Assembly (NCBI GenBank): GCA_002269645.1
Contig: NIVC01002656.1
Span: forward strand, 51,247-115,246
Source: Macrostomum lignano
Lineage: Eukaryota
Length of the DNA: 64,000 bases
Direction of reading: 5' to 3'
Shown: one piece after another, positions 1 to 63,266 of the stretch
Numbering within the stretch: the first letter of the stretch is position 1
Layout: each line of letters starts with the position of its first letter
Notes under the pieces: model-generated
The model's database searches: none
Told to the model about the DNA's origin: nothing
The model's input: only the letters and a program-made list of their open reading frames with translations
Program-made: the position numbers and the translations under genes

Positions 1-212
1 CATGGTCAGCTTAAAAACTTTGCGAGCTAAATAGATAAAATAGGTGGCCTTTACATAGAGCGGAGCACTCAAAGTTAAGGTTTGCTAAATGTTAGCTTAA
101 ATGGCGACATTAATAAACAATACTTGGTCTTTCTGTCCATCTATCAGGGGCGTGGCGTGGACATGAGGGGCATCGCGGCCTTCAATAATGACATGGTGCA
201 GAAGCCCCTTTT

Positions 213-652
213 AATGAAATGGCACCCCCTCAATAATGAAATGGCGCCCCTCAATAATGAAATGGCGCCCTCATTCAATAATTAAATGGCGACCCTCAAT
301 AATGAAATGGCGCCCCCCCTCAATAATGAAATGGCGCCCTCATTCAATAATTAAATGGCGACCCTCAATAATGAAATGGCGCCCCCCCTCAATAATGAAA
401 TGGCGCCCCCCCCTCAATAATGAAATGGCGCCCGCCTCAATAATGAAATGGCGCCCTCATTCAATAATGAAATGGCGCCCCTCAATAATGAAATGGTGCT
501 CCCACTCAATAATGAAATGGCGCTCCCACTCAATAATGAAATGGCGCCACCACTCAATAATGAAATGGCGCCCATCAATAATGAAATGGCGCCCTTTTCC
601 CTCTATAATGAAATGGCAGCCGCACTCAATAATGAAATGGCGCCCTCTCTAA
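213..652. repeat. Minisatellite, 21-24 bp unit (ctcaataatgaaatggcgccc + variable C run), about 19 copies
   Basis: Tandem copies read directly. The ORFs 82..285, 236..652 and 448..663 are translations of this repeat. Confidence 0.95.
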
Positions 653-7549: not shown

Positions 7550-8560
7550 CTCCCTGAGAATCTACCCCATAAATCTCTCCCTGAGAATCTACCCCATACA
7601 TTAGATCTCTCCTTGAGAATCTACCCCATAGATCTCTCCCTGAGAATCTACCCCATACATTAGATCTCTCCTTGAGAATCTACCCCATAGATCTCTCCAT
7701 GAGAATCTACCCCATAGATCTCTCCATGAGAATCTACCCCATAGATCTCTCCCTGAGAATCTACCCCATAGATCTCTCCCTGAGAATCTACCCCATAAAT
7801 CTCTCCCTGAGAATCTTCCCCATACATTAGAACTCTCCTTGAGAATCTACCCCATAGATCTCTCCCTGATAATCTACCCCATACATTGGATCTCTCCTTG
7901 AGAATCTACCCCATAGATCTCTCCCTGATAATCTACCCCATACATTAGATCTCTCCTTGAGAATCTACCCCATAGATCTCTCCATGAGAATCTACCCCAT
8001 AGATCTCTCCCTGAGAATCTACCCCATAGATCTCTCCCTGAGAATCTACCCCATAAATCTCTCCCTGAGAATCTTCCCCATACATTAGATCTCTCCTTGA
8101 GAATCTACCCCATAGATCTCTCCCTGATAATCTACCCCATACATTGGATCTCTCCTTGAGAATCTACCCCATAGATCTCTCCCTGATAATCTACCCCATA
8201 CATTAGATCTCTCCTTGAGAATCTACCCCATAGATCTCTCCCTAAGAATCTACCCCATAGATCTCTCCCTGATAATCTACCCCATACATTAGATCTCTCC
8301 TTGATAATCTACCCCATAGATCTCTCCCTGATAATCTACCCCATACATTAGATCTCTCCTTGAGAATCTACCCCATAGATCTCTCCATGAGAATCTACCC
8401 CATAGATCTCTCCCTGAGAATCTACCCCATAGATCTCTCCCTGAGAATCTACCCCATAGATCTCTACCTGAGAATCTACCCCATAGATCTCTCCCTGAGA
8501 ATCTAACCCATAGATCTCTCCCCGAGAATCTAACCCATAAATCTAACCCTGAGAATCCAA
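7550..8560. repeat. Minisatellite, 27/32-bp units (gagaatctaccccata[catt]gatctctccct)
   Basis: About 35 tandem units with variant patterns. ORF 8289..8636(-) is repeat-derived. Confidence 0.95.
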
Positions 8561-14074: not shown

Positions 14075-14510
14075 GATTTTGAGCGTCTTTTAAGTGACTC
14101 TCGAGTGTCTTTCGGGTGACTCTCTTGAGCGTCTTTTAAGTGACTCTCGAGTGTCTTTCGGGTGACTCTCTTGAGCGTCTTTTAAGTGACTCTCGAGTGT
14201 CTTTCGGGTGACTCTCTTGAGCGTCTTTTAAGTGACTCTCGAGTGTCTTTCGGGTGACTCTCTTGAGCGTCTTTTAAGTGACTCTCGAGTGTCTTTCGGG
14301 TGACTCTCTTGAGCGTCTTTTAAGTGACTCTCGAGTGTCTTTCGGGTGACTCTCTTGAGCGTCTTTTAAGTGACTCTCGAGTGTCTTTCGGGTGACTCTC
14401 TTGAGCGTCTTTTAAGTGACTCTCGAGTGTCTTTCGGGTGACTCTCTTGAGTGTCTTTAGGGTGGCTCTCTTGAGTGTCTTTTAAGTGACTGTCTTGAGT
14501 GGCTTCTAAG
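14075..14510. repeat. 46-bp dimeric minisatellite (24+22 bp related subunits)
   Basis: gagtgtctttcgggtgactctctt + gagcgtcttttaagtgactctc repeated about 8 times, with degenerate flanks. Confidence 0.93.
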
Positions 14511-15639
14511 TGACTCTCTTGATTCTTTTTTGAAAAGACTGTCTTGGGTGTCTTTCGGGTGAATTTTTTAGGACTGAGTGCCTTTTAGGTAACTATTTGA
14601 CAGTTTAAATAACGACTATTAAATATAGGAGTTTTGGAGACTCTCGGACCGTAAGCTCCGTAAGCTTTTAAAGTGACAGCTCAAGTGTGTTGCAGAAGAT
14701 TCTCACAGCACTTAAGTGCTTAGATTTTTCGGCTGTTAACACAATCGCGCAAATGAAATATGAAGGTATTTTATTTAATTGAGGTACAAAATGACAAATA
14801 AAACGCATTTTCTACATAACACAATAAGTTTTTAAGAAAAAGTGATTTCGACTTGCCGTCCTGATTAAGTCAGTGCAAAACGCATTGGATATACGCTGTA
14901 TAACGACTTTATTCAATTACCAAAATGTCAATGAAAGTCGTAAAATTGTCTCTGTTAACTGTAAACGAGAAAAAGCTTTAAAAAGTTTTCATAAAGCTGT
15001 GCCTTTGATAAAAAAGTATCACTACTGTACGAGAGAGCGTATTGCCGGTTTAAGTGGGACGGGGCCAGGCCTTTAGAGACCGAAAAAGGTTTTCTTCTAA
15101 ATGAGAAACTTCCGTTTTGGATTTCCGCGGCTTTCACTAAACACGAAAAAACGAGATAATATTGTCCAAATCTTCCGGTAACACTTGAAAAAATATTCAT
15201 CACAAAAAATAAAACAAAAGTGCGTCAGATAAAAAACAGTAGAACAAAAGACACTGGCTACTGTATAGTCGAAATGTAAGAGCATAAAGACTAAAAAAGG
15301 GCAAGAGAGTTTAAAAAGTTTCATTGTTGTTTAAAACAAAGCAAAACCGATCGCCGAAATAAAACAATTGCACGGAAAAGAAATGGAATAGATAAATAAA
15401 AATGTAGTGAGAATATCTGACGCAGTATAGGTATAAAATAAAAATATACACATTAAGTTCGACATCCGCATAAAAAGCAGTTCAATGCTAATAAATCCTA
15501 CATATATATATCGAAAGGCACTGCTTACAAAAACGCGGGGATCATGGTATCGCCAGCGTGCAAAATTTTCTTAGTATAAAATTAAATGAATTAAAACATT
15601 CGAATAACATGGCATACATTGTTTCTCTAATTGGTAATA

Positions 15640-16050
15640 AAATAGCATGCCAATCTGCAAATGTACCTGAATGTGACATTCCACCATGGACTCAACTTGA
15701 TGCTCAACAGCCAATCTGCAAAGGTATCTGAATGTGACATTCCACAATAGACTCAAATTGATGCTCAACAGCCAACCTGCAAATGTACCTGAATGTGACA
15801 TTCCACCATGGACTCAACTTGATGCTCAACAGCCAATCTGCAAATGTACCTGAATGTGACATTCCACCATGGACTCAACTTGATGCTCAACAGCCAATCT
15901 GCAAAGGTATCTGAATGTGACATTCCACAATAGACTCAAATTGATGCTCAACAGCCAATCTGCAAATGTATCTGAAGGTGACATTCCACCATGGACTCAA
16001 ATTGATGCTCAACAGCCAATCTGCAAATTCATCTGAAGGTGAAATTCTAC
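15640..16050. repeat. 61-bp minisatellite, about 6.5 copies
   Basis: caaatgtacctgaatgtgacattccaccatggactcaacttgatgctcaacagccaatctg recurs at 61-bp spacing (e.g. 15780, 15841, 15902). Confidence 0.93.
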
Positions 16051-16229: not shown

Positions 16230-17942
<1,713 letters not shown>

Positions 17943-19539
17943 TTTGCTAGCTCGTTAATATTTCCTTCTGAAAGCAAGTAAAATGAATAAAGAAATATTT
18001 TTTTAACTAGACTCCTGACCTCATATGTGTAGATACTAGTATGTACTCAAAAGTATGTACTCAAAAGTATGTACTCAAAAGTATGTACTCAAAAAGTGCA
18101 TACAATGGCTCTTAGCATAATACACCAATCAACATAGAAATATATGCTAATGGCATTGAAAATGATAAATTATATCTTATTAGCTAAGATTCAATTCATC
18201 TTATTCTGCAATTTTACTGCCAAAAAATCTGTTTAAGTTATTGTCAAAAATATTGAAATATCATTAGACTCCATATAGAATAACATTTAACATCCTAAGT
18301 ACAATGTTATAAGAGTAAACAAATACTTTCTACATTAAATAGATCATATTTTATATTATATTTCAAGGTATTATAAATTTTAGTATAAACTTACGCCAAT
18401 AAATAATATCACTAGCCACTCAGCTATGCTTTGAGTTCTTGGTCTTACAAAAAAAGTATTTATATTTTATTTTTCACAAACTTAATCTAATTCCTAAATA
18501 ACATGAAAAATATCAAATAATAGAAAAATTATATTTTAGTTAAAAGTAGTATACTTAAAATCACCAAAAAACTAATTCTAAAATTTATAGATATAATAGC
18601 CATAAAAATCTAGTATCTACTAAAAAAATAAAAAATTGTGTTTTTAGAAAAAATGTGCGTTTTGAAGAAATTCTGTTTTCAAAAGATCTGATCATAGTAT
18701 ATAATTATTTTTATAGTCACAAGTTATGCTCATATAAATAAGTTACACAAAATTACACAAATGCTTGAAATAAAACAATAAGTTTCAACCTGGCAAGCAG
18801 TAGCAAAATTTTTGAGTTTCCTACACTATTTTGGGAAATTTGGGGTAATTGATTAAAAATAAAAAATATGCTATTAGCTATGGGAGTATAAGTAAATCTG
18901 AATGAAAGGGCAATCCATAACCAGGCATGTAGCCAGGATTTATATCAGGGCCTTATTATATTAAACAGTTAGTGATGGAAGCAAAATAAAAAAGTAGTAA
19001 AAATTGTCTGCCCTCCAGAGGGGAGCATGCACCTGGTGTCCTCCCTCTTGGCTATGCTATGTACCTGCACTATAATATTAATAATAAATAATATATTATG
19101 CTTGTGTATAAAATTTATAATACATAATATAATAATAGTAAGACATATTTTACATTTAAGAAAAAGAAGAAAAGGAGGTTGAGGCTTTCATCGACTTTGC
19201 TTCTCTTATATAGAACCTATATCAGCCCAGCGAATACAATCTATTCATAGAAAGCCGCAAAGAGTAAGCGATAATTAGTCATTGTTTAAATTTTTATTTT
19301 CACAAACAACGGTACGCACTCTATCAAAATTTCCTTCTTTAAATCATCTATCATATTTATTACTATGAAGCAACAAAAGAACCGTGCTATATTGGTTTTA
19401 TTTTACTAATTTCAAACGTTTTTACAAGTAACAATTTAACCATCTAACCATTTACAAAGTAACCATTATTTTACGTCATATAGTTTCTTCTCAATGAAGA
19501 CGTGTTCGTTAACTTTGGTACATGCAACTAAGGGGGGTT

Positions 19540-19870
19540 CACAAACTCGAATTTTCACAACGTCGAAAGCACCTTCTTTCATAAGGTCGCAAATTTCACA
19601 ACGTAGAAAACTCAAATAACAGCCACTTTCCAGAAGGTCTTTTACTAGAGTTTTCGATGTTGTGAAATTTCGACCTTGTGAAGTTTCGACCTTGTGAAAG
19701 TGGCTGTTATTCAAGTTTTCTACGTTGTGAAATTTCGACATTGTGAAATTTCGACATGAAGTCTCTTGCTAAAGTTTTCGGTGTTGTGAAATTTCGACCT
19801 TGTGAAGTTTCGACCTTGTAAAATAATTTACTTTTCGACATTGTGAAATTTCGACCCTGTGAAAGCACCC
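19540..19870. repeat. Foldback-like array of about 18-bp units (gtgaaatttcgac...) in both orientations
   Basis: 19591-19630 is the reverse complement of 19696-19735 with 2 mismatches. The block 19645-19700 is near-duplicated at 19766-19820. Confidence 0.75.
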
Positions 19871-20413
19871 CCAACTAAGGACTTCATCAGCGTAGTGAAT
19901 TTGATTTATAGATGAAAAAATTGAGTAAAATAGTGCTATACCTACAAATAATCGTTCGAATATTTTTCTGGAGGTCGGTTTCTTTTGGAAGTTGTCTGTC
20001 TTTTGAGCACTGATCATGCACATGCACGACATCTTATCTTTTGGACTTCCAATTCAAATTGCGGAATCTAAAACAGGTCGTCGAAAGGATGCTCACACGT
20101 GACACAACCCTCTTGTGAGCATCAATCATATATATTTATCACACGGATCTAGCAAAAATGCATGCATGTACATTTGATCCATCTTTTAACTATTACATAC
20201 ATAATGCATATAGATCATGTTTGCGCTAGCAAATTAGTACTCGCTCGCGCGCACCTTGCGCTGGCAGAACGTTTGACAGTAACATAGAGCTGCGCTTTAT
20301 TTGATGTTGCTTCTCCAATTATGTTGAAAATATACAAGCAATATTCCTACTAAGCAATAATCCTATCGTTGGACTATAGCTTAGAGTATAGTTTTGCGTG
20401 CACATGTAAATTT

Positions 20414-21802: not shown

Positions 21803-22501
21803 AATTTTTGTAATAGTCGCTAATACTATAAGTTTTCGTGGAATCTGTGCATAATCTGTCGGAGACCATCAAAGTGACTTACCACAAGGACTTACCAAAA
21901 TACATTTAGTATTCCAGATACTATACACAGAAAAAAGTATAGTAGGATTCAATAAAATCATTGCTAGATTAAAATCCCACTGGTTAAGCAGAGTTTTTAT
22001 AAGTTTTATATTGCAAGAAATTCAATACCATATTCGGCTTCTCCAATGTGAACTGAACTATTTGGTTTCATCATCAGGCGTGACGCAGCATCCTAGTTTC
22101 CCAAAAATACAGCTGCAGCGGGATTCTTTTTTTGTCTGTCCGAATGCGTCTACAAAACAATGGTGAAATTAAATCCGATTTTTATATTCTCATTTAACGA
22201 AAATAAATGGCACGTGATGTTTGGTTGATTTTTTCGGCTTTACGAAAATCTGCTTTAAGGTGATGCGTAAAGACACCTTATTTTGCCTGTTTTACATTTA
22301 CTTTCAACTCTATTACCTCGTACATTTACAATAGACGTTTGTGTATTTTTTGATTAACTTAAAGTACCTGTCTTAAAACACTTTGAGTTTAAAAACTACT
22401 ACTTTTACAGAACCATTCGAAAACAAGTTAATTACATTACACTGATGTACGTCTATAAACTACGTAGTATAATATTTAAATCAATCGACGAATGTTCAGC
22501 C

Positions 22502-23095
22502 TTAGAAGAAATAATTCTCCAGGGCTTCATCGGCCTCGTCGACCTCCGACGCAGCTGGTCGACGCCGTCGTTCATCCCTGCCTGGGCGTCCCAGCTCGGA
22601 GCGCTCGCGTCCTCTCTTGGCGTCATTTTTCTTTTTGTCCTTCTGCTTCCTCTCTGGCCACAAATTGCGCCGGGCCTCCTTAGCGTAGGCGTAAAGCGTT
22701 TTGCCACGAGTGGGCGAACCGCAGCCTTTGAAATGGACCTCCAACTGGTCCTTGTACTTCACTTTGGAAGCGTCGAAATCAGTGGCAATCAGTTGCTTGT
22801 CGTTGCGCACGATCATTGTGATGTTGTCAGTTCACTGGTTAAAGAAAGTAGCCAGGTTGTTGCTAAGGTTGGCGAAGCTGTTGTTAAGAGTGTTCAGCTG
22901 CAGTGTGCGAAAGTACGGATGTGGCTCGTCCACCTTGCGCACAAGCAAATAAAAAGTCCCGTTCGAGCCGCTGGACCAATTGCCCCGTCCGCCGCGGTTG
23001 CCGCTTCGCCATCTCTTTCTGCCCCAGGCGTCCGAGCTGCCGACAAGGCAGACTGCTGCCACCAGCACAATTAAGAGTGCCAACGAGAATTTCAT
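22502..23095 (-). CDS. Secreted protein: signal peptide + R/G/W-rich segment + possible ubiquitin-like fold, with one in-frame TGA (87 aa to the stop, 197 codons if read through)
   Basis: Signal peptide MKFSLALLIVLVAAVCLVGSSDA. ORFs 23095-22832 and 22816-22502 are in the same frame, joined by TGA + TDNIT. The frame ends at TAA 22504-22502. Confidence 0.7.
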
Positions 23096-24172
23096 CTCTA
23101 TGTCTTACAGAAAGTCTGCCAATTCGAAGAGTTCCAGAATCACAGTCTTATGATCCCGTCTGACACTCGGCCTCCACTCCCTTTTATGCTGATTTTGAAC
23201 AACCCAATCTTGGCCGGTCAAGGTTTTCCGCTGGGTTTAAACTGCTGATAATGTTTGCACTGGAAAATGAAGAAACTTGTTATGATTAAACTGGCTATTC
23301 TTGTCAGAACCAGTCCAATACCAGCCTAAGTCACTTGCATAAATGATTCTTATCACTGAATTTCAGCTCTCTGAAAGCTTTGACAAAGGTCCTCGAGTGC
23401 TTTGGTCAAAAGAGCACCAATTCCTTTCTTTGCTACAATCAATGTGCCTAAAGCAATACGTCAAACTGATTAGATAACTTCAGACCCTTTTCTATGTGCA
23501 GGAAAAGGTGGGAAGAAATCTCAGTAGAGCCATTTTAGGTCTAAGTACGAGTGTATACAATCCAGGCTGTCTACAATGAGTCATACATGTAATGAACTAA
23601 AACTCATCCCAGACCAATGTAGAATTTCTGTTTCCTGTTTTTACATTCTACTATTTGCAAGGAACATGAATAGATTTCATTAATTCAGTGGTAGGATCAT
23701 CAAACTTTGGGCAGGCACACGTGTGCACATGCGCATACACATAAACTCCGGAATGAATAAATTAGGTGCTATTGTGTACTGAAGATAATCCAGTTAGAGA
23801 CAACCTAGCCTCTGGCAGATCTCAACAATGCGTCCTTTGTTTGCCCCCTTCTCAGCTGTTTGTGCTATCAGCTCTGAGTAAATTAGTTATGATCACACTC
23901 AGATAGGCTTTTGTCAGCAGAGTTAATGAGCTGCGAGCATCCGAAGTGGACTGCACTTGCTATGTCTGCTATGTTTGATTTGTAACCATCCTATTTGTGC
24001 AGTTGCTCCGTAATTAATTATCTACAATGAACCATTGTGTTTCATTTCGCTGTTGACCATGTCATTCAATTAATTAAGTCACACTTTTAGCAAATAAATG
24101 GCGCTGCATCGCTTCGGTGGCCAGAAAAATCCTGCTCATTGTTTGCCTCAAAATCAGCCAACGTAAGCCTCC

Positions 24173-25999
24173 ATGTTTGATCAAATTTCGTTACATTCAG
24201 TGTCAAATGACGACAACGAAAAAGAACTCTGCCCTATGCAGAGCTGCGGCAAGCTCCATAGTAACCGATTCGATGCTTTGTACTCTGGCCGATTGGGCGA
24301 GTTCGAAAGCTACCTGGAAAGTCTGGCTCCGAAGGAGGTGCGCGAGCTTCTATTGCCAACAACCGATGCTGTTGAAAATGCGGCTTTGCGATACGGAAGC
24401 CTTCAGCCTCTGAGCTCCATGACGGTGGCCGAGAAAAGAGTCGAGAATTTATCAATCACTCCACTGATTGAGCTGATGATCAATCAAAGAACCGAGTTAG
24501 TTATTAAAGCATTGGCGCTCATGACAGAAGATACCGAATCACAACATGCTGTCGCTCACAGTGCAAGATTTTCCTTATTCCAACTCGTCGACTTTTGTCG
24601 CTGCTTTCCAAACAGAGAGCTGCAGATGGCTGAACTTTTCACTCAGCTGGCGAATGCACAGCCGACCCTTTGTGTGAGATGGCTGTTAGTGGAGACCGCT
24701 CAAGAAGCTGTAAGACCATTGGAGTACGCTTCCATTTGGAATTGTTTTCAGCTGGCCAAAGTCTTCATTGACGTGCCCGGCTATCTCAAAACGACAATTG
24801 TCTCAGAGAAAGACAGCAGACTTGAGATTGACCGCTTCGACTTCTCCAACTATCGCTGGTTTACGGGCTCCCGGTTTACTAGGTCGCCATTTGTTCAACT
24901 GAGCTGCGCCACCACGCGACTGATTAGCGACTTTATCCCGGCGGGATACGCAGATTTCTACGACTGTCCCGCGGTTCAGGGCTACCTGCCAAAAATTCTA
25001 GCAACCGGCCCGACTTCACGCAGATCCACTTACATACTCATCGTATTTTACGTATTATATTACACAATTTACACAGTCACCCTAACGGCGCGCCTGTTCA
25101 CAGGAGGTCAATTCAGTTCGAGCTCTATACTCAAAGTGGCTGGCGAAGCTAATAATACAATCTCGTATCTGACGAAGCTGCCGCAGCAGGTATTAACTGC
25201 TCTACTCTACCTGTTCTATTTTAGGGTAGTTATCCAGCTGCTCTTTATATTCATGGCCTCATCGCTATTGATTTCCTCGCATCTGACCAACATTAGCCTT
25301 CCACGGCCGTCTAGAAGGCGGTGGCTGCCGCTGCATTGGTTACGCAGTGCTATATCGCTCTCTAGCGACATACGCGAAGGCTCGTCCATTGTCTATCTCT
25401 TGCATCAGTTCCTGTCGCTAATGCTAGAGTTTGGCTGGACAAAAATGAACTACGTCACCGTCAATGATGAGCGATTTGTAAATCCTGAAAATTTGAAGAT
25501 CTTCTTTGCGTTGCACATTCTATTCCTAATACTATTGATGATATTCTTCTTCGATGAACTGGCCTCGCACTTCAAGGTGTTTTTCTACTTGATTCACAGT
25601 TTGCAAGAATCAATGAAGGTTTTGTACATCATCATCATGCCTGTCTTTGTACTATGCACCACGATATTCATCTGTCATCCATTCACGGAAGACACTGACA
25701 AGGACCTATTGGAAGTACTGGCTGACATGATGGTGGGCGCTAGCCGCTACGCGCTGAGCCTCGGTGACTTTTCCGGTCCCAGTAAAGACTTGGTCCTGTG
25801 GGGCCAGCCTATGTTCTTCATCATGGTATCCCTGTTCCTCGTGAACTTCTGCATCGCTCTACTGACGCAACGCATCGCACTAATGGAAGAGCGAACCGAG
25901 CTGAGGCAGATAATGCGAATTGTAGATTTGCTCCATCAGATATGGCTGATTGCAAGGCTTATTATGAAACGATTTAAAAACATAGCTGAAAACCGTTGA
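24173..25999 (+). CDS. Intronless TRP-type (TRPA-like) 6-TM cation channel, 608 aa, no clear ankyrin array
   Basis: Six hydrophobic segments, pore-like ALSLGDFSG, and S6/TRP-like FIMVSLFLVNFCIALLTQRIALMEE. Pre-S1 YDCPAVQGYL resembles 'L.hP.v..yl'. Confidence 0.75.
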   Translation: MFDQISLHSVSNDDNEKELCPMQSCGKLHSNRFDALYSGRLGEFESYLESLAPKEVRELLLPTTDAVENAALRYGSLQPLSSMTVAEKRVENLSITPLIELMINQRTELVIKALALMTEDTESQHAVAHSARFSLFQLVDFCRCFPNRELQMAELFTQLANAQPTLCVRWLLVETAQEAVRPLEYASIWNCFQLAKVFIDVPGYLKTTIVSEKDSRLEIDRFDFSNYRWFTGSRFTRSPFVQLSCATTRLISDFIPAGYADFYDCPAVQGYLPKILATGPTSRRSTYILIVFYVLYYTIYTVTLTARLFTGGQFSSSSILKVAGEANNTISYLTKLPQQVLTALLYLFYFRVVIQLLFIFMASSLLISSHLTNISLPRPSRRRWLPLHWLRSAISLSSDIREGSSIVYLLHQFLSLMLEFGWTKMNYVTVNDERFVNPENLKIFFALHILFLILLMIFFFDELASHFKVFFYLIHSLQESMKVLYIIIMPVFVLCTTIFICHPFTEDTDKDLLEVLADMMVGASRYALSLGDFSGPSKDLVLWGQPMFFIMVSLFLVNFCIALLTQRIALMEERTELRQIMRIVDLLHQIWLIARLIMKRFKNIAENR

Positions 26000-26686: not shown

Positions 26687-27624
26687 TCAACTGAAGATCC
26701 CCGTAGGTAGCCAGCGCTTCACGTTGAGTGCATTCTCGGCGAGACCTTTGATGCTTTCCTTGAAGTCCGAATTGATCTTTTCGATTAGAAACTTCTTCTC
26801 AGATTCGATCAAGTGTGTGACGACCGGTTTCACTAGGAAGCGATAAAATATCGACATGTTTGTTATTCCCACCGTGATTGCCCCGATCTCCTCTACTTTC
26901 AGCTTTTGCATGTCCATTTTTCCTTCCTTGATGTTGAAAATGAGGCTCACTATGCCGTCGATATACTCTGTGGTGGCATTGAACGTGGGGTGATATACAT
27001 GGTTCCGAAGCGTCACGTCACTGTCGTACGAGACCACAACTGGGCCGATGCGAATGGAGAACGTAATCTACAATTAGTGAAGGTTAAGGAATACAGTAAG
27101 CAAGTGATTTGACTATTATTGCAATTGTTACGAACAGAAGGCCTAAAAGTGAAATGACCCACCTCGGCTTTTCCTTCTTGCATATCTAAGCCGACTTCGC
27201 CGTGTCTTCTAGCCGTTGACAAGCCTTTGCAGACGCCGTTTTTGAGCTCGGCCACGCCGGGATAGGTTTTGCAGCAGACTTGCTTTTCGAATTCAACGCT
27301 GCGCTCAGGCAGTTTCAGCGGGTCCAAGTTAGCCAGCTTCAGCTTGGGCCCCACCGACTTCAGTAGGTCGTCGGCTAGATCGTTGACCATGCCACGAATC
27401 TTGTTGGTTGGTATTAGTGACAAAATCGAGTTGAAGTTTCGCAACTGTTGTTCGATGCTCTGATTCTGCTGATTCTGCTGCTCAGTAGTGCTGCTGCTGC
27501 TGCTGCTTTTTCGCAGTTTTTTCTTTCGACTCATCTCTTTCGGAATGCTCTTCAGTTTAGTATCGCCTTCGATCGCATTCTCCTTCTTAGGATTGTCGTC
27601 CACCTGAAATCCCACTGTTTCCAT
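26687..27624 (-). CDS. Group 7 mite allergen-like (TULIP/Takeout superfamily) lipid-binding protein, 280 aa, 2 exons
   Basis: Exons 27624-27163 and 27067-26687 with a 95-bp phase-0 GT-AG intron. Motif LDPLKLPE...F...GVAELKNGVCKGLSTARRHG, followed by beta-strand patterns and a C-terminal helix. Confidence 0.7.
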
Positions 27625-30440: not shown

Positions 30441-31569
30441 TCACCTGACCCCGCAGCTGCGCATTTGAAACTTGAGCTCCCACTCGGGAAAGAGGCTCTG
30501 AAGTCTGTCAACGCACCAGCTCAGCCGCCGCCAGTCTGGCCCGCTGATGCTGACGATCGCCCCGCGACACCGCCGAGGCAGCTTCAGCGTCTCCAGAACC
30601 TCGGCCTGGCAGCTGAAGTGGCTGAGGACTTTCAACAGCCGGCGATCCTCCCTGGTCACGAGAGAGCTGAAAACGTCAGACGCGTCTGTCACGCGGAACA
30701 CCTGGCAGACTGGAGTCTGCTGCTCGACCGGCTGCCGGCTGTTCGAGTTGGACCGGCCGCGATGACTCGGCCCGTCGGCTGCGCGGTTTCGCGACCTCGG
30801 CTTCGGCACCGGCGGCGCTGTGAGGTTGTCTCTGAGCTGCGGCTGGCGCTGCTGCTCCCGCCACGGCGAGCTCGGCATCGAGCGGATCTCCAGCGAGGAG
30901 CTGCGAATCCGCGCGGTGTGACGAGACCGGCGCAGCGACGGCTGCTGCTGGCGGTGCTGCCGAGGCGACGGCGACGGGTCAGGAGGCGGAGCTGGCGTTG
31001 GCCGGGTCGCGGTCGGCTCGTCGAGCGTGGTCACGGCGTCGAACGAGGAGCTCACAAGGCTGCTCGAGTTGGCCTCGGCATCCGTCGCCACGTCGGGTGA
31101 GGCGGCCTGGTCGGCTGGGGGCGCCGCCGCCTCCGTGTTGGTGGTCGGAGGGAAAGCCAGGAGGGATGCCCGCGACAGCGAGACGAGCTTTGTTGCGAGA
31201 TGGCGTTGCGACCAGGGCGCCGGCGAGCGCGACCGTCTGAGAGGCGGCGGCGGCGTCGACGGGAGACTGGCGAGAAACCGCTGCAACATCTCTGAACTCT
31301 GGGGCTGCTGCGGCTCTTTCTGAGTCTGAGGCTGCTGAGCTGCCTTTTGAGGCTGCTGAGGTTCTCTCTCAGGCTGCTGAGCTTCATTCTGAGGCTGCTG
31401 CGGCTCCTTCTGCTGCAGATGTGCGCCTTGGAACTGGTGCTGCTGCCTTTGCAAGCGTCGCAAAGAATGATCAACGTCCTGAGAAGCCAGTAGAGGATTG
31501 CGGATCGGTGGCGGAGGCAGAAGGTACCGGCGATCGCGACTGCGACTGAGTTGCTGGTGTTGCTGCTGA

Positions 31570-31600
<31 letters not shown>

Positions 31601-31760
31601 GCTGTTGTTGCTGCTGCTGCTGCTGTTTTTGCTGCTTCTGCTGCTGAGCATGCATTTGCTGCTCCTCGACGTGCTGGCGCTGGTGCTGAAGCCTGGAGTA
31701 GCGAGCCCGCACGTGTTCGAGCTTCTGATAGTTGCTAGCCATGTTCGAATCCTCGTGCAT
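30441..31760 (-). CDS. Intronless polyQ/Pro-rich protein with a C-terminal KH-like domain, 439 aa
   Basis: ATG-to-TGA ORF with a CAA/CAG tract at about 31553-31640 and EPQQPQ repeats. The C-terminal about 85 aa has a beta-alpha-alpha-beta-beta-alpha hydrophobic pattern (CQVFRV..DVFSSLV-TRED-RRLLKVLSHF..QAEV..IVSISG..RLSWCVDRL). Confidence 0.7.
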
Positions 31761-32927: not shown

Positions 32928-43148
<10,221 letters not shown>

Positions 43149-52221: not shown

Positions 52222-52559
52222 ACCAGTGGCCTTCTGTTCCTGACAAATTTTATGGGGCGCAGTTCATGAAACATCACTTTGGAAAAGACTGTTTTATTGC
52301 TTATACAGCCGACGTATTCACCTTAGCAATGTGATATTAACAGAAATGAATAATTTACAAGAATGTTTGTTTACATGATAACCTCGTCTGCTGCATGTGA
52401 TACTTGTACTTATTTTGCTATCAATCGGTTTTTGTCTGTGGAACAGAAGTTTTTAATCACCGACTTCGAATAATCTATTCAGATAATATACATATATATA
52501 TGTCTATATATATATATAATACTCACTATTTAAGTTTATCCTACAAAGCTTATCTATGT

Positions 52560-53200
<641 letters not shown>

Positions 53201-53676
53201 CAGTTCGTCTGACTGCCTTTTTCATGGTTCATGTCTTTTCAGCTAATATGCAGCGCTCTCTTTACAGCTTTACTATGCCCTATTTCTCATATCTAAAAAT
53301 AGATAAACAATAAAAAACTTACTACACAAAAAACGCGCTGCAGCCTGTATGACCCGTTCAGCCAATAACATTCTAAACTTCCCTTTCTTACCTGCTTGGC
53401 GCATTTTCGCAATTTTCATTGTGTGGCAGCCATTTCTCGGCAATCGCAGTGCTTTCAAATACAAAAGCACTGGTGTTTTTTTTGATATCTCGCGTCCCAC
53501 CGCCAGCGGTCTCGTGCGCGCACCCTACTTTAACTTAGCGCATTCCAAAGTTGAGCTGGAAGACTGGCTGTCTACAGCTTGCCAACTCACTGCGGGTTCC
53601 AGTTTGAGCCTGACTTGACTTGACAGCTCCAGCTGCTCAGCCATTTCATTTGCACCGGTCTCACAGGCAAAAAATA

Positions 53677-54990
<1,314 letters not shown>

Positions 54991-55106
54991 ACTAGAACAG
55001 GCGTCAATAAGTTTGACTGATTTGCGTGGCAGCGCCATTGAAACTTCATCGAATTTATATAACATTGTAACATACATGTAGGATAACATTAGCCTATTCA
55101 CCATAT

Positions 55107-55880
55107 TCCACTGCTCATTCACCTTCTCCACTGCTCATTCACCTACTCCAGCGCTCATTCGCCTACTCCACTGCTCATTCACCTACTCCACTGCTCATTC
55201 GCCTACTCCACTGCTCATTCGCCTACTCCAGCGCTCATTCGCCTACTCCAGTGCTCATTCGCCTACTCCACTGCTCATTCACCTACTCCACTGCTCATTC
55301 GCCTACTCCATTGCTCATTCGCCTACTCCAGCGCTCATTCGCCTACTCCACTGCTCATTCACCTACTCTATTGCTCATTCGCCTACTCCACTGCTCATTC
55401 ACCTACTCCACTGCTCATTCACCTACTCCACTGCTCATTCGCCTACTCCACTGCTCATTCGCCTACTCCAGCGCTCATTCGCCTACTCCAGTGCTCATTC
55501 GCCTACTCCACTGCTCATTCACCTACTCCACTGCTCATTCGCCTACTCCATTGCTCATTCGCCTACTCCAGCGCTCATTCGCCTACTTCACTGCTCATTC
55601 ACCTACTCTATTGCTCATTCGCCTACTCCACTGCTCATTCACCTTCTCCACTGCTCATTCACCTACTCTAGCGCTCATTCGCCTACTCCACTGCTCATTC
55701 ATCTACTCCACTGCTCATTCGCCTACTCCACTGCTCATTCACCTACTCCACTGCTCATTCACCTACTCCAGTGCTCATTCGCCTACTCCACTGCTCATTC
55801 ACCTACTCCACTGCTCATTCACCTACTCCACTGCTCATTCACCTACTCCACTGCTCATTCACCTACTTCAATGCTCATTC
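55107..55880. repeat. 20-bp minisatellite (ctactccactgctcattc[a/g]c), about 38 copies
   Basis: Tandem copies. ORF 55251..55949 is repeat-derived. Confidence 0.96.
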
Positions 55881-57420: not shown

Positions 57421-60400
57421 ATGGCCCGTCGTGGAACTCGAAAACTGTCGAAAAAAGCCAGCATGCCTAACGCAAGCGGCGCAGCAAGCAATGGAGGCAG
57501 CCTGGCGCGCGAGTGTCGCGAAGCGCTACACGACTTTGTTGCCAACTCGAGCATTCGCGGACTTAAACGGACGCTGTTCTCACCAACTAGGCTATTGCGA
57601 GTCTTCTGGACTGTGTTTCTGCTCAGTAGCTTTGTGCTGGCAATGTCTCAGGTTAGTATTGACAAAGGGTAAGACATGGCGGTAAAATTTCGCATCGTTG
57701 AAGGCATTAAACTTCACAAAATCAAAAATTAAACATTAAAAAGTGTAAACCTTCAAGCTGGGATGGTCGTAAAGACTTTAAGAGTGTGTGAAATTATGAA
57801 CTTTTAAAAATTACTAGCAAGACAATGAGCAAACTTTACTTACGTCGTACAACCAACCATTCTTGAAGGTTGCCTTCCTATTGGAGAAGTATTTGAAACG
57901 CGAGACCACTGTTCAGCAACAAAAGATCTACGGCCACCTGGAAGCCTTTCCCGCGGTGTCCTTCTGCGTGTCTGACCCGTTCTCTGACGGTGCAACGGAA
58001 CTTTGGTCTAGCGGCGCCGTCGAGTCCCCAAACGAATACAGTCGGAAAGTTCGCCAGGCCGCTCTGCAGCTGATGCGGGCACCAACTCGGGAAAATCGGC
58101 AGCTGCTATCGGCGCTGCTCAGACTGGACCAGAGAGAGGCCTACTTCCAGAATGTGGACAACCTGACAAACTTGATGCAGCTGGGCCACACTCAGCCGTT
58201 CTACTTCTGCGCCATCAACCCGTTTGACCATGGCCAGCCGGTGTTCAAGTACTACGACAGAAACAGTTGTAATCTGACGGTGACGCGATGGCTGCATCCC
58301 ATCTACCTAAACTGCTATACGCTAAGCTTCGCCAATCGTGCATTCTCCCAGGCGCTAAAGTCCATCTTTCTGGTGTTGCCAGCTGGTCGTTCCGAGCCGC
58401 GTGACGGCTTCGGGCCGTACGAGAATGCCAGCTTCTTGCGCGACACGCTGAAAAAGTACACCACTATGCAGGTAGTGCTGCACGAGGCGAAGAAGAAGCC
58501 AAACTTTGACGAGACTGTTATGCTCACCGCTCATCAGTCGGATGTGAGTACTATCCTCATCCAATTCTGCTTAACCTAATGGCTACGTATCACTTAAAAA
58601 GCTACTTATATATGAAACATCGAGATCATTCCGGGTCAAGCAATCAATATGTGTACTCTTAAAATTTATGAGGATTAATGCCACAAGCCTGCACGTACTG
58701 AGGTGACTAATTTCATTTGATTCCCTCGTCGTAGCGATTTTCTCGACTTATCCTTCGGATTAGCGCCAAGTCAATCTGAATTGAAGAAAGGGCTTCTCCG
58801 ACAGAATACAGCTTTGTTTGATTGTCTTTAAATAAGGAACGGACTGGAGAGCAAATACTCCAAATACTCCACTTGAACTGGAACATGCAAAGGACGTCGG
58901 AGACTTCCTATCGAACTGTATGCCTGCCGATTCTCGATAAGGCATGCAAAGATCACGGATGAAACAAAATTTTCGAGGTCAAGTGCAGAGAAATTTTTCT
59001 GCGTGTCTAATCCGACAAACCATCGGTATAAACATGAGCGATGCTGGATAGCAAAATTTGCATTTAGAGATTTCGAGTGAGCGACTATGGGCTAGGCACA
59101 GTCTATGCGCGGTGGCTAAGCTCAGAGGATTATCAGTAAGAAAAAGTCACTCGCACCTTACTAGAATGGAGTTATGGTGAGTTACTTCGACTGTGAAGCT
59201 TGATCTTACCCGCCGACGCTGATGGACGTCGGCCAAACGTCGATGTACGAGCGCAAAAGTACGCACTTTGACAGCTACTTCGACAGAGAAGCAAGCTAAC
59301 TAAAACAAATATTATGTAAATTTTATAAGACCTCAGTGCTCTCAGTCCGCAGTAATGCAGCAGAAGATATGGGAAAAGGCATGCACACTTTATGTCATTA
59401 ATATAATGATCGGTTGCACTTCCAAGACAAGCCATGTAAATGTCAGTAATAAAGACGCTGGGAAATGTAAAGAAGCAGAAAAATTGTTTGCATTTTACTG
59501 CTGTAGAGGCTAAAAAATTTTTTTACATATTTTCCTGGCTGTAAATAAAGTACAGTAGTGCAGTTTGCGTCTGATACACCAAATCCAAGTTAGCAATGCA
59601 AAAGTATCACAAACTCTTGATAAACTACTTCAATAGAAAAGAAAAGCTTTTCAAAAGTAACAGTTTGATTGAAATAAAATTTCTGGAGATGTAGTTACAC
59701 GAGCTACATATTTCATTCAAAAGTTGTGCGTGATATACACAATCGCAATGCCACTGATTGTCTTACAGAGAAGATCAAGTACATAACTTAGTTTTTATGG
59801 AGCTTGTTTGCAGCATGCAAGTACGCTCGTACGAGCGGTATACGAGTGTGCGCTCGTACACAAAACGGCTCCAATGTACAGCGCATCCCTCTCTTAACGT
59901 CCAACCCTTCTGTGTTGAGTATTTTATACACTCCGTCACTTGTAAGCAAATCTCGCTGTTTTGCAACTCGCGAAATTTTGCTTAGTCAAGCGTTTTGATT
60001 TTTGTGATTAATGACACCATCATGAGTGTGCAATCGAAAAGAAGGCACGGAATGCTCAAGCGATGGTAAAAGTGTATTGCTACAGGTGGAGACTATTTTG
60101 AGAAGGCTGCCTTGAAGTTTGATGATGATGATGAATGACTACAGATTGGTTTCTTTGAGGACAAAATATCGCTTTTTATATTTTTAAACTTTTACTGTAA
60201 GACTATCAGTGGCATTGCGATGGTTTTTCAGGCATAACTTTCGAATGAAATGACCAAAATATACTCAGCAACAGTCAAAAGCTCCACCCCACTAAGCGAG
60301 ATGATTTTTTCACTTATTGCGAGTGACGCAACCTACGGCATGCGCAAAGCTTATTGCCGCTTGGGGTGGCTTGGCACTCTGCGCTGGCCCTCCCGGTCCC

Positions 60401-62456
60401 CAGACATGAATCCCATCGAGCATGTCTGGGACTTCCTAAAACGTAGCATTCGAAAAGAGAATCCACCATAGAATGTTGCGGAGAGCTCTGCGTCATGCCA
60501 TTGAAAACGCTTCGGAGCGGCTTCCCGAGGACTTTCTGCGCCGCCTCATCATTGGGATTCCCCGCAGAGTCGTCGCACTTCTGCGTGCGAGGGGATCCCA
60601 CACGCATCGCGATTCTAACTGAATATTGCATAAAAAATTATGATTTTACTACGAGTATTGATAGTCAATCAACTTTCCCTTCCTCGCGGCAGCTTAGTTG
60701 CGTAACTTGAGGGATATTGAATTGTGAGTGTGAAGTTTTCGCAATTTGGAGGGTGGAACTTTTGACTGTTGCTGAGTATACATGCAACTGAATTCATTGG
60801 AAAGAAGAGATGTACCGCTTTAAAATGACGCCAAAGTTGTGCTTGCAGTTGCTTTTTCTCTGGAATTATTCAAAACTTTCCGGACACCCCTCTTGAAAAG
60901 TATAGAAAAAAACTTTTGCATATACCCGTATAGTAGTTAAAAACAAAGATTTTGAACCATATCCAACATTGGGTTTGGTTTTTTGCCAGCCGCAGAACGC
61001 TTTAAAATGTGCAAGTCGCTCTTGAGTCACGAATGCGTATTTCGGAGGCTCTTAAGACGCACTCTTTTTTAATGTAAATAATGAGACATCTCGACTGATG
61101 TGGCTCAAGAGTTGACAAACAGTTGAGTCTCGTAACTTTGCTTGTTTTTAGTGCTACTTTTTTCAGTTTTAATTTTTTATCGTGATTTCAACAATCCAGT
61201 TGCAAGTATCAAACGCCGGGTATACATGCAGAGTGCCATGTCAGGCAAGGAAGTATTCAGTCGAGTTAGACATTAGAGGTCCCCAATGGGGTAAAACCAG
61301 TATTTCATGTCACTAATGCAGGCACTATTAAATCGATAAGGAGGCTTAGTAAAACAAGCAGAAGTCTTCCATCCTTTGCATTTAGATTAACGTAATCAGC
61401 TTCACGACAAGCAAGTACGTCAACAACGACTGCAGCATCGGCAAGGACGAGCAAAGCGAAATCGGCGACGCGGAGGTTGGCAACAATCCAAACGACTTCG
61501 ACGCTTGTCTGGAGCACCGAATCGAGCAGGACGTGATTGACAGGTGCGCCTGCACCCAGCGACTAATGCGTACAGACCCGACGGTGCCGTTCTGCTTTGC
61601 AATCAACTGGACTAATCTCAACTCGACCGTGTCTAGAATGGACTGCAGTCTGTCTGGCGGAACCTACCTCACCAGTTTCTCGGCCGCATCCAAGGCCTGC
61701 CCGCGGCCCTGTCAGAGCATCGTGTACGATCTGAACGTGCTGCGCAGTGCCAATAGAGCGTCGGCGTGGCAGGACTGCTGGTACATGTGGATGCTGATGG
61801 ATTCCACGGTGACCGCGCATCAAAGAGACAGCTACTTGATGCAGCATCTCAACGCCAGCGGCGACAGCTTCAACGAATCGGTCTGCCGACGCCCCTGGTA
61901 CCACCAGCTGCCCTACGTGAAGCTGAAGATTGTCCGGCAAGACTTTACCACCAGGACATTCAATGAGACTCTCGTACTCACCTCAGCGGCTCTCTTTGCT
62001 CAGGTGGGAGCGGCGCTGGCCTTCTATCTGGGATTGACGCTCACGTTTTTAGCCGAGCTGGCCGATCTGGCCATCCGGTTGGGCTGGCGCTGTCTCATTA
62101 GTAAACGAAAATCCTGGCGTCAGAGAAGAAGAGAACGTCAGAATCAGAACCAGAAACAACAGCAACAGCTGCGGAATCAGCAGAACCAGGCGGAAATAAA
62201 GACTGAGTCAACAATAAATTCAGTAGCCTGCAGCAGCGGGCGCAGTGGGGGTGGTCTCTGCATCGCCAACAACTCTGGTCTGGCTGTCGATGTCAGTCCT
62301 TCGGGTAGGGAGAACGCCTGGCAGGGCTTTGGACTTCATTGCGACTACATCTACGCGGACGAGGACGACTTCTCAGACGATGATGTCGAAGGAGACGCAA
62401 CCGCGGCGGTGTCCGACGACTTGCGATTGGATTCAGCTGACTATCGATACATCTAG
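57421..62456 (+). CDS. DEG/ENaC-family ion channel, 658 aa, 3 exons
   Basis: Exons 57421-57651, 57869-58543, 61386-62456, all phase 0. Motifs: TM1 RVFWTVFLL, FPAVSFC, HPIYLNCYT, VVLHE, the Cys-rich thumb (IDRCAC...CPRPCQSIVY) and TM2 LFAQVGAALAFYLGLTLTFLAE. Confidence 0.92.
60264..60776 (+). mobile_element. Tc1-family deletion derivative (513 bp) in ENaC intron 2
   Basis: 26-bp TIRs ctcagcaacagtcaaaag(c/t)tccaccc (60264-60289 / 60751-60776, 1 mismatch) flanked by TA. The internal WPSRSPDMNPIEHVWDFLKR is the Tc1 DDxE third-residue motif. Confidence 0.9.
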
Positions 62457-62670: not shown

Positions 62671-63266
62671 AGACTGGTAGATAAGCCTACAGACTAGTAG
62701 ATAAGCCTACAGACTGGTAGCTAAGCCTACAGACTGGTAGCTAAGCCTACAGACTGGTAGATAAGCCTACAGACTGGTAGATAAGCCTACAGACTGGTAG
62801 ATAAGCCTACAGACTGGTAGATAAGCCTACAGACTGGTAGATAAGTCTACAGACTGGTAGATAAGCTTACAGACTGATAGCTACGCCTACAGACTGGTAG
62901 CTAAGCCTACAGACTGGTAGCTAAGCGTACAGACTGGTAGCTAAGCCTACAGACTGGTAGATAAGCCTACAGACTGGTAGATAAGCCTACAGACTGGTAG
63001 CTAAGCCTACAGACTGGTAGCTAAGCCTACAGACTGGTAGCTAAGCCTACAGACTGGTAGCTAAGCCTACAGACTGGTAGATAAGCCTACAGGCTGGTAG
63101 ATAAGCATACAGACTGGTAGCTAAGCCTACAGACTGGTAAATAAGCCTACAGACTGGTAGATAAGCCTACAGATTGGTAGATAAGCCTACAGACTGGTAG
63201 CTAAGCCTACAGACTGGTAGCTAAGCCTACAGACTGGTAGCTAAGCCTACAGACTGGTAGCTAAGC
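62671..63266. repeat. 20-bp minisatellite (agactggtag[c/a]taagcctac), about 30 copies
   Basis: Tandem copies read directly. Confidence 0.96.

What the first reader, a model, noticed from the sequence alone, without database searches (positions are those of the whole stretch)
22502..23095. Secreted cationic + ubiquitin-like protein split by a single TGA: candidate readthrough or dual-product gene
Seen: a 198-codon frame with a strong signal peptide, then WGRKRWRSGNRGGRGNW, and exactly one internal stop (aac cag TGA act gac). An ATG follows 5 codons later, and the tail is charged. Inference: FRTLQLNTLNNSFANLSNNLATFFNQ*TDNITMIVRNDKQLIATDFDASKVKYKDQLEVHFK follows the beta-grasp (ubiquitin-like) pattern across the stop, so both halves look like one fold. 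A secreted Ubl would be unusual. The gene could give a short 87-aa peptide-like form and a long form by readthrough or Sec insertion, or be a fresh nonsense allele. No SECIS was evident by eye.
Basis: partly seen in the sequence, partly recalled or inferred. Interest (0 to 1): 0.7.

Follow-up and report, generated by a model that had tools for sequence, protein, structure and literature searches.

The report
Fresh nonsense mutation in flatworm gene copy
The in-frame TGA is a single-base change in one of three near-identical copies of a small secreted-protein gene in the flatworm Macrostomum lignano. The other two copies read serine there, so this is an ordinary new null copy, not a recoding signal.

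Summary
In detail: on the minus strand, 23095..22502 is one 198-codon frame with a signal-peptide start and a single internal TGA (22834..22832).

The window is Macrostomum lignano DNA (assembly Mlig_3_7, contig NIVC01002656.1). The same assembly holds two more copies of this single-exon gene, Mlig017608g1 and g3. Both are intact 197-aa ORFs with TCA (Ser88) where the window has TGA.

- **Versus g1:** the window CDS differs at exactly that one base (1 of 594).
- **Versus g3:** it differs at 18 further sites, but g3 also has TCA, so TGA is derived.
- **Flanks:** they differ from g1 at about 0.3%, so one CDS difference is what is expected.

No SECIS was found, the UGA-A context is not the known leaky one, there is no downstream RNA structure, and TGA ends the paralogue's CDS. 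Three copies fit the published S/L1/L2 subgenomes of this recent polyploid.

A distant paralogue aligns straight across the stop. A medium-confidence model gives beta-beta-alpha-beta-beta-beta, and its top Foldseek matches are nearly all ubiquitin-like folds, though none is significant.

Verdict: a fresh nonsense copy (or, less likely, a residual assembly error) of a lineage-specific secreted gene. Low interest.

The parts
22502..23095 (-). Whole single-exon coding frame of the window's copy of gene family Mlig017608 (197 codons plus stop in the intact copies), here interrupted at codon 88
   Evidence: It is 593/594 identical to the CDS of PAA57527.1 (g1) and 575/594 identical to that of PAA85629.1 (g3).
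23027..23095 (-). Codons 1-23, predicted signal peptide MKFSLALLIVLVAAVCLVGSSDA
   Evidence: Read directly; inference from the n-h-c layout. The same layout is present in the paralogue P0004. No predictor was run.
22832..22834 (-). In-frame TGA at codon 88. The derived base is the G at window 22833 on the coding strand (C in both other copies, where TCA = Ser88 is part of the sequon N86-Q-S88)
   Evidence: This position is NIVC01002656.1 position 74079 (offset).
22721..22966 (-). Residues 44-125, conserved core with beta-grasp-like topology. The stop falls in the loop between the helix and the third strand
   Evidence: Paralogue alignment over residues 44-149. Domain model elements E46-52, E61-67, H74-84, E92-97, E118-122 in protein numbering. 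Foldseek matches.
22505..22720 (-). Residues 126-197, charged low-complexity tail (pI about 10) with several dibasic or polybasic runs including RRRR at 176-179
   Evidence: Low pLDDT in both models.
22502..22816 (-). 104-codon ATG ORF downstream of the TGA, which is the product on record for this contig (P0003). It starts inside the third beta strand and has no signal peptide
   Evidence: That this is simply the longest-ORF choice of the annotation is an inference.
23096..23345 (-). Upstream flank, nearly identical in all three copies, including an invariant GCATAAAAGGG (TATA-like) about 90 nt before the ATG
   Evidence: Promoter function is an inference.

Best explanation
The window holds one of three homeologous copies of a single-exon Macrostomum lignano gene (family Mlig017608). 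The gene encodes a 197-aa secreted protein that is probably N-glycosylated. After the signal peptide come a short arginine/glycine-rich cationic stretch, a compact domain of about 80 residues with a beta-grasp-like topology, and a charged disordered tail.

In the window's copy a single C-to-G change (window 22833) turned Ser88 TCA into TGA. The change is derived and recent: this copy is otherwise identical in its CDS to copy g1. It is one of the ordinary scattered differences (about 1 per 340 bp) between two near-identical chromosome copies of a recent polyploid. This copy therefore ends translation at codon 87. The resulting 64-residue mature fragment lacks the last three strands of the domain and is most likely non-functional. 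The two intact copies supply the protein. No recoding (readthrough or selenocysteine) is involved.

Shown: the sequence relationships, the derived state, and the absence of recoding signals.

Inferred: that the base is a true variant and not a consensus error; that the copies are the L1/L2/S subgenome copies; secretion; the fold; and the fate of the truncated product.

The protein's own role is a low-confidence inference: an extracellular gland or mucus component whose cationic ends bind polyanions.
For: - **Source and intact copies:** the source is M. lignano, and intact 197-aa copies PAA57527.1 and PAA85629.1 exist.
- **CDS differences:** window versus g1 differs at 1 of 594 nt, the TGA/TCA site. 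Window versus g3 differs at 19 of 594, and g3 also has TCA.
- **Flanks:** 99.35% identical to g1 over 8.3 kb, and 28 mismatches spread over 9.5 kb. Identity to g3 is 93.8%.
- **Chance:** 1.7 differences are expected in the CDS, and 4.3% of single-base changes make a stop.
- **Selection:** g1 versus g3 shows purifying selection on both halves. dN/dS is 0.18 overall (0.12 before the stop, 0.28 after), with 11 synonymous and 7 nonsynonymous changes (binomial p = 6e-4).
- **Regulatory flanks:** promoter and 3' flanks are intact and conserved in all three copies.
- **Genome background:** the Mlig_3_7 assembly of the inbred DV1 line contains three paralogous subgenomes S, L1 and L2 (PMC10733133) and 180 Mb of blocks that are at least 95% identical (PMC5730564).
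- **No recoding signals:** no SECIS or other Rfam match at E <= 10, and no structure after the stop (z = +0.52). TGA terminates the paralogue's CDS.
Against: - No reads could be examined, so a consensus error at 22833 is not excluded.
- No transcript or protein data were found for this gene, so expression of the window copy and absence of a read-through product are not shown directly.
- No orthologue from another species was available. Polarity rests on the two other copies in the same genome.
- The window-g1 divergence (about 0.3%) is well below the published genome-wide L1-L2 figure (1.4-1.9%). The pair could therefore be a wrongly duplicated haplotype or a locally homogenised region, not a typical L1/L2 pair.
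Confidence: 0.77

Rival explanations
1. The G at 22833 is a residual consensus or polishing error in the PacBio/Canu assembly. The real locus reads TCA, so all three copies are intact.
For: - The assembly is Canu on early PacBio data, polished with Pilon (PMC5730564).
- 93% of read pairs map to several loci, and many paralogous blocks are reported as wrongly represented (PMC10733133), so polishing in triplicated regions is weak.
- The difference is a single base in an otherwise identical CDS.
Against: - PacBio consensus errors are mostly indels, not C-to-G substitutions (established knowledge).
- The two contigs differ by 28 well-spread substitutions of mixed types, a 23-bp repeat-length change and a roughly 760-bp indel. 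They are therefore distinct haplotypes, and this difference looks like the others.
- Neither other copy carries a G here, so mis-mapped reads could not have introduced it.
Confidence: 0.17
2. The TGA is functionally decoded, by programmed readthrough or selenocysteine insertion. The copy would then make both a short 87-aa form and a full-length form.
For: - The downstream frame is open and identical to a functional copy.
- Basal UGA readthrough of a fraction of a percent to a few percent occurs in animals in general (established knowledge).
Against: - The stop is not conserved: both other copies encode Ser with TCA, not Cys or Sec.
- No SECIS-like element was found in 21500-23600 on either strand at E <= 10.
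- The base after the stop is A (UGA-A), not the leaky UGA-C/UGA-CUAG context. This was read directly, and the context rule is established knowledge.
- Structure downstream is no better than in shuffles.
- The open downstream frame is fully explained by the mutation being recent.
Confidence: 0.03
3. The truncated copy has been kept because the 64-residue cationic secreted fragment (pI 11.6) has a use of its own, for example as an antimicrobial-like or polyanion-binding peptide. The downstream 104-aa ORF on record could be a second product.
For: - The fragment keeps the signal peptide and the Arg/Gly/Trp-rich stretch.
- The promoter is intact.
Against: - The copy has had no time to show retention: there are zero further CDS differences from g1.
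- The fragment ends in the middle of the conserved domain.
- The 104-aa ORF lacks a signal peptide, begins inside a strand, and would need reinitiation after an 87-codon ORF.
Confidence: 0.03

Closest known systems
Mlig017608g1 (PAA57527.1) and Mlig017608g3 (PAA85629.1), hypothetical proteins of Macrostomum lignano
   Same: They are the same gene. Their CDS is 593/594 and 575/594 identical to the window's, with the same single-exon layout, and they share a flanking Grp7_allergen-like neighbour with g1.
   Different: Both read TCA (Ser88) where the window reads TGA. On this contig only a 104-aa downstream ORF is on record.
Mlig013076g1 (PAA85536.1), the only other relative found among 1.84 billion representative proteins
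   Same: It has a signal peptide, many N-glycosylation sequons, the conserved core LVRKVD..PY.R ... NIT.IVRN..QL..TD.D (31-37% identity over residues 44-149), and a proline/arginine-rich tail.
   Different: It has a 102-nt intron in the PYYR codon, which the window gene lacks. It has no Arg/Gly-rich N-terminal stretch and no lysine-rich tail. UniRef labels its cluster 'Doublecortin domain-containing' and 'DUF4430 domain-containing', which my Pfam scans did not reproduce.
Ubiquitin-like beta-grasp domains (e.g. Ubl domain of tubulin chaperone E, PDB 1WJN; ubiquitin; SUMO; elongin B; PB1; CIDE-N)
   Same: The order of secondary-structure elements is b-b-a-b-b-(short helix)-b. Nearly all of the top 50 Foldseek matches belong to this fold class, with TM 0.4-0.6.
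   Different: No match reaches E <= 0.001, and the model is only medium confidence (one of five models). There is no sequence similarity, no Pfam hit and no C-terminal di-glycine. The protein is directed to the secretory pathway, so it is not a conjugatable modifier.
Selenoprotein genes and programmed UGA readthrough genes of animals
   Same: They also have an in-frame UGA followed by an open, protein-like frame.
   Different: Here there is no SECIS, no Cys/Sec homologue at the site, no conserved stop, no leaky context and no downstream structure.
Early loss of duplicate genes (nonsense alleles) after whole-genome duplication
   Same: One of three redundant copies carries a single disabling change while the others stay under purifying selection. 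The genome is a documented recent polyploid.
   Different: Only one lesion is present and it is very young, so it may still be a segregating or line-specific variant and not a fixed pseudogene.

Membership tests
Selenoprotein gene | SECIS element in the 3' UTR | tested here: not met
   An Rfam 15 scan of 21500-23600 on both strands at E <= 10 gave only five weak snoRNA/sRNA chance matches and no SECIS.
Selenoprotein gene | Homologues carry Cys or Sec at the UGA position | tested here: not met
   Both other copies have TCA = Ser. In the alignment the paralogue P0004 has His-Cys at the two columns aligned to Gln87-Ser88, in a poorly conserved, gapped loop.
Programmed stop-codon readthrough | Stop codon conserved among relatives, with coding conservation downstream | tested here: not met
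   The stop is present in only one of three copies. Downstream conservation exists, but it is explained by the intact ORF in the other copies.
Programmed stop-codon readthrough | Leaky context (UGA followed by C/CUAG) or a stimulatory downstream RNA structure | tested here: not met
   The context is CAG UGA ACU. The 100 nt after the stop fold at -18.3 kcal/mol against a shuffle mean of -19.8, z = +0.52.
Reassigned TGA genetic code | TGA not used as a terminator in the genome | tested here: not met
   The paralogue Mlig013076g1 CDS ends in TGA. This is a nuclear contig with ordinary animal genes.
Nonsense-mutated duplicate (null allele or young pseudogene) | An intact copy with a sense codon at the site in the same genome, and the stop derived relative to a more distant copy | tested here: met
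   g1 and g3 both have TCA. g3 is the outgroup, at 3% CDS divergence.
Nonsense-mutated duplicate (null allele or young pseudogene) | The variant base is real in the organism, not an assembly error | not testable with these tools
   No reads were available. Exact-protein look-ups found these products only in GCA_002269645.1.
Beta-grasp (ubiquitin-like) fold | b-b-a-b-b core topology with significant structural similarity to known members | tested here: inconclusive
   The full-length model was useless (pLDDT 39.7). The domain model has pLDDT 61.7 and pTM 0.57 with the right element order. Foldseek's top matches are almost all beta-grasp, but the best is E = 0.14 with TM about 0.5.
Ubiquitin family proper (PF00240-type modifiers) | Sequence match to the family and a C-terminal Gly-Gly for conjugation | tested here: not met
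   No Pfam hit at E <= 10. The domain is followed by a 72-residue tail and has no terminal GG.
Doublecortin domain / DUF4430 (labels that UniRef gives the paralogue cluster) | Match to the Pfam model above or near threshold | tested here: not met
   P0001, P0002, P0004, P0005 and the trimmed domains gave no such hit at E <= 10. A profile search against PDB sequences gave none either.
Secretory-pathway protein | Cleavable N-terminal signal peptide | not testable with these tools
   No predictor was on hand. By eye it shows MK, a 17-residue hydrophobic core, then SDA. Six N-x-S/T sequons in P0001 and seven in P0004 are consistent with it.

The most novel reading that the evidence does not exclude
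Mlig017608 and Mlig013076 form a Macrostomum-restricted family of secreted, glycosylated proteins built on a ubiquitin-like (beta-grasp) domain with cationic ends. No relative is detectable elsewhere among 1.84 billion representative proteins. Within it, the window's TGA copy is a naturally occurring truncation that still yields a secreted 64-residue cationic peptide with some activity of its own.
Probability: 0.04. Interest if true: 0.4.

Novelty: new member of a known kind. Interest (0 to 1): 0.12.

Why it matters
It matters little. This is an example of the first step of duplicate-gene loss (or a line-specific null allele) in a recently polyploid flatworm, and hundreds of such cases are expected genome-wide.

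Two practical points follow.
- The 104-aa protein on record for this contig is an artefact of choosing the longest ORF after a premature stop. The locus would be better described as a disrupted copy of the 197-aa gene.
- The gene family is a lineage-specific secreted family with a probable beta-grasp core and no known function. It could be worth an in situ or RNAi look by people who work on Macrostomum gland secretions.

Tried and rejected
1. **Intron hiding the TGA.** I looked for GT...AG pairs around the stop. The intact copies are annotated and translate as one uninterrupted 594-nt exon, so no intron is needed. Rejected.
2. **Alternative genetic code.** Rejected, because TGA ends the paralogue's CDS.
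3. **Pfam.** Scans of both halves, the joined protein, the paralogues and the trimmed domains found nothing relevant.
4. **Profile versus PDB sequences.** Only chance hits, E > 1.
5. **Profile search of the 5.8-billion-protein index with the four-sequence alignment.** No new members.
6. **Full-length AlphaFold model.** Too poor to use. Its Foldseek matches (DOCK DHR2 and others) are meaningless.
7. **Independent evidence for the TGA.** Exact-sequence look-up of the 87-aa ORF found nothing on record, and the 104-aa ORF was found only on the source contig.
8. **Expression or tissue data.** A full-text search for Mlig017608 gave 0 papers. Four papers' supplements were searched. The single occurrence was 'Mlig017608.g5', listed in a large orthogroup in a truncated file. 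I could not tie it to this protein and did not use it.
9. **tblastn of both family members against the window.** No second copy in the 64 kb.

Full report
**1. The observation**

On the minus strand, window 23095..22502 is a single frame of 198 codons:
- ATG, then 87 sense codons;
- TGA at 22834..22832, in the context aac cag TGA act gac;
- 109 further sense codons, then TAA.

The start, MKFSLALLIVLVAAVCLVGSSDA, has the layout of a cleavable signal peptide. This was judged by eye because no predictor was available. It is followed by WGRKRWRSGNRGGRGNW. Met94 lies five codons after the stop.

**2. Where the window comes from**

ORF density is low, tandem repeats are abundant, and there are no tRNAs. 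The window carries exons of ordinary animal genes: phospholipase C-gamma, GOLPH3, amiloride-sensitive channel and a Grp7_allergen-like protein.

A protein search with the joined frame (X at the stop) returned one cluster. [quoted passage not shown] Exact look-up of the 104-aa downstream ORF places the window on contig NIVC01002656.1 of assembly GCA_002269645.1 (Mlig_3_7). Record coordinate equals window coordinate plus 51246.

**3. What the TGA is**

The cluster has three members:
- PAA57527.1 (Mlig017608g1), 197 aa;
- PAA85629.1 (Mlig017608g3), 197 aa;
- a 104-aa entry, which is the window's own product on record, starting at Met94.

I fetched the two intact loci and compared the coding sequences base by base.

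| Comparison | Differences in 594 nt | Codon 88 |
|---|---|---|
| window vs g1 | 1 (position 263, G vs C) | TGA vs TCA (Ser) |
| window vs g3 | 19 (the same site plus 18 others) | TGA vs TCA (Ser) |

Because g3 also reads TCA, TCA is ancestral and TGA is a derived single C-to-G change (window 22833).

The flanks tell the same story.
- The window is 99.35% identical to the g1 locus over 8.3 kb and 93.8% identical to the g3 locus.
- The 28 substitutions between the window and g1 are spread evenly over 9.5 kb, about one per 340 bp. They are of mixed types and are accompanied by a 23-bp repeat-length change and a roughly 760-bp indel.
- At that rate 1.7 differences are expected in a 591-nt CDS, and one is seen. 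4.3% of all possible single-base changes in this CDS create a stop, so about 7% of unconstrained ORFs like this one would carry a nonsense difference.
- Promoter-proximal and 3' flanks are intact and nearly identical in all three copies.

**4. Why there are three copies**

The published analyses of this assembly explain the count. The sequenced inbred DV1 line has extra copies of the large chromosome, and the assembly holds 180 Mb of non-repetitive blocks that are at least 95% identical (PMC5730564). A later study resolved three paralogous subgenomes: S for the small chromosomes, and L1 and L2 for two variants of the large chromosome. Heterozygosity within each subgenome is negligible (PMC10733133).

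Three copies of this gene, two very close and one more distant, fit that picture. Assigning the window and g1 to L1/L2 and g3 to S is my inference. The window-g1 divergence (about 0.3%) is lower than the genome-wide L1-L2 figure (1.4-1.9%).

**5. Is the gene real, and are both halves coding?**

Between g1 and g3 there are 11 synonymous and 7 nonsynonymous changes. dN/dS is 0.18 overall, 0.12 before the stop position and 0.28 after it. The excess of synonymous changes is unlikely under neutrality (binomial p = 6e-4). The numbers are small, but both halves behave as coding sequence of one gene.

**6. Tests of the recoding ideas**

- **Selenocysteine.** No SECIS or any credible RNA family match was found in 21500-23600 on either strand at E <= 10. 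The homologous residue is Ser, not Cys.
- **Readthrough.**
  - The stop is not conserved.
  - The following base is A, not the C or CUAG of known leaky contexts (sequence read directly; the context rule is established knowledge).
  - The 100 nt after the stop fold no better than shuffles, z = +0.52.
- **Code reassignment.** TGA terminates the paralogue's CDS.
- **Hidden intron.** Not needed, because the intact copies translate as one exon.
- **The 104-aa ORF on record.** It starts inside a predicted beta strand and has no signal peptide. I take it to be the longest-ORF choice of the annotation pipeline, not evidence of a second product (inference).

**7. What the protein is**

An exhaustive HMMER pass over 1.84 billion representative proteins found only one other relative. 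It is Mlig013076g1 (PAA85536.1, 207 aa, also M. lignano), with E = 6.6e-8, aligned over query residues 44-149, straight across the stop position. BLASTP gives 31% identity from the signal peptide to residue 143. A profile search added nothing. On present data the family is restricted to Macrostomum.

Shared features:
- a signal peptide;
- many N-x-S/T sequons, six and seven respectively, with N-I-T conserved;
- the core LVRKVD..PY.R ... NIT.IVRN..QL..TD.D...D..E;
- a proline/arginine-rich tail.

Pfam finds nothing in any member or in the trimmed domains, and PDB sequences give only chance matches. UniRef labels the paralogue's cluster 'Doublecortin domain-containing' and 'DUF4430 domain-containing'. 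By established knowledge both are beta-grasp families, but I could not reproduce either assignment.

**8. The fold**

- The full-length AlphaFold2 model is unusable (pLDDT 39.7), and its Foldseek matches are noise.
- A model of residues 43-146 reaches pLDDT 61.7 and pTM 0.57, but in only one of five models. Its elements in order are strand, strand, helix, strand, short strand, short helix, strand. That is the beta-grasp order.
- Its Foldseek matches to the PDB contain no hit at E <= 0.001. Even so, nearly all of the top 50 belong to the beta-grasp class: the ubiquitin-like domains of tubulin chaperones E and B, ubiquitin, SUMO, elongin B, NEDD8-related and ISG15 domains, and PB1, CIDE-N and RA domains, with TM 0.4-0.6.

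In this model Ser88 sits in the loop between the helix and the third strand. The truncated product therefore loses the last three strands and should not fold.

**9. Most likely mechanism**

The window's copy is a fresh null, or nearly null, copy of a triplicated gene. Ribosomes stop at codon 87. The 64-residue mature remnant (pI 11.6) is probably unstable. The two intact copies supply the protein, so the change is close to neutral.

For the intact protein I propose, with low confidence and by inference only, an extracellular gland or mucus component. Its compact beta-grasp-like module would be flanked by cationic segments that bind polyanionic partners.

Probabilities:
- real nonsense variant: about 0.77;
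- residual assembly error: about 0.17;
- functional recoding: about 0.03;
- useful short peptide: about 0.03.

**10. Novelty and verdict**

A premature stop in one redundant copy of a recent polyploid is an ordinary event. The gene family is uncharacterised and lineage-specific, which is mildly interesting in itself. Interest is low.

No step had to be referred.

Noticed in passing
window 22445..23074 (+): A 209-aa ATG ORF runs antisense across almost the whole CDS. It is the longest ORF at the locus in a mechanical list. It is probably a mirror ORF of the coding strand, with no support of its own.
   Followed up: no
window 26687..27624 (-): The neighbouring gene encodes a 280-aa protein with a Grp7_allergen (mite group 7 allergen, lipid-binding type) domain. 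The same neighbour is present next to copy g1 in L001.
   Followed up: partly
window 24173..25999 (+): A 608-aa uninterrupted ORF with several hydrophobic, membrane-span-like stretches and no Pfam match at E <= 0.1. It lies head-to-head with the gene studied, about 1.1 kb away.
   Followed up: no
L004 3237..3338 (paralogue Mlig013076g1): The distant paralogue has a 102-nt GT..AG intron, phase 2, inside the Arg codon of the conserved PYYR motif. The window gene has no intron at the homologous PYFR, so the intron was gained or lost within this small family.
   Followed up: partly
window about 19510..19517 versus L001 8619..9381; window about 21715: Structural differences between the two near-identical copies. 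L001 has about 760 bp extra, of unknown content, and a 23-bp longer TATAGTC-type repeat. Both are useful as copy-specific anchors for read mapping.
   Followed up: no
window 52557..55880 and 62671..63266; also 212..645, 7550..8557, 14079..14518, 15649..16047, 34738..35224: Dense tandem arrays, which create long spurious ORFs such as LSVC and LSIY repeats:
- (TGTC)n, about 160 copies;
- (GATA)n, about 180 copies;
- two 20-mer arrays;
- 24-, 27-, 35-, 46- and 61-mer arrays.
This is in line with the reported 15% simple and tandem repeat content of this genome.
   Followed up: no
window 30441..31760 (-): A GC-rich (55%) 439-aa ORF with a long poly-Q/QQPQ-rich region and a Pro/Ser-rich region, with no Pfam match. 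Long ORFs on the opposite strand and in a second frame overlap it, probably because of its composition.
   Followed up: no
window 37729..43148 (+); 16230..16682 (-); 57863..62456 (+): Exons of a phospholipase C-gamma-type gene (PI-PLC-X, SH2, SH3, PI-PLC-Y, C2), of a GOLPH3 (GPP34) gene, and of an amiloride-sensitive sodium channel (ASC) gene.
   Followed up: partly
window 18001..20000: A marked AT-rich block (GC 0.29 against about 0.43 elsewhere). It overlaps the region where the window and L001 differ by the roughly 760-bp indel.
   Followed up: no
PMC7336406 supplementary file 4: An identifier 'Maclig_37v3@Mlig017608.g5' is listed in the large orthogroup OG0000021 together with many M. spirale and M. 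hystrix transcripts. The file is truncated, and I could not establish whether g5 is this protein or another gene of the same transcriptional-unit cluster.
   Followed up: partly
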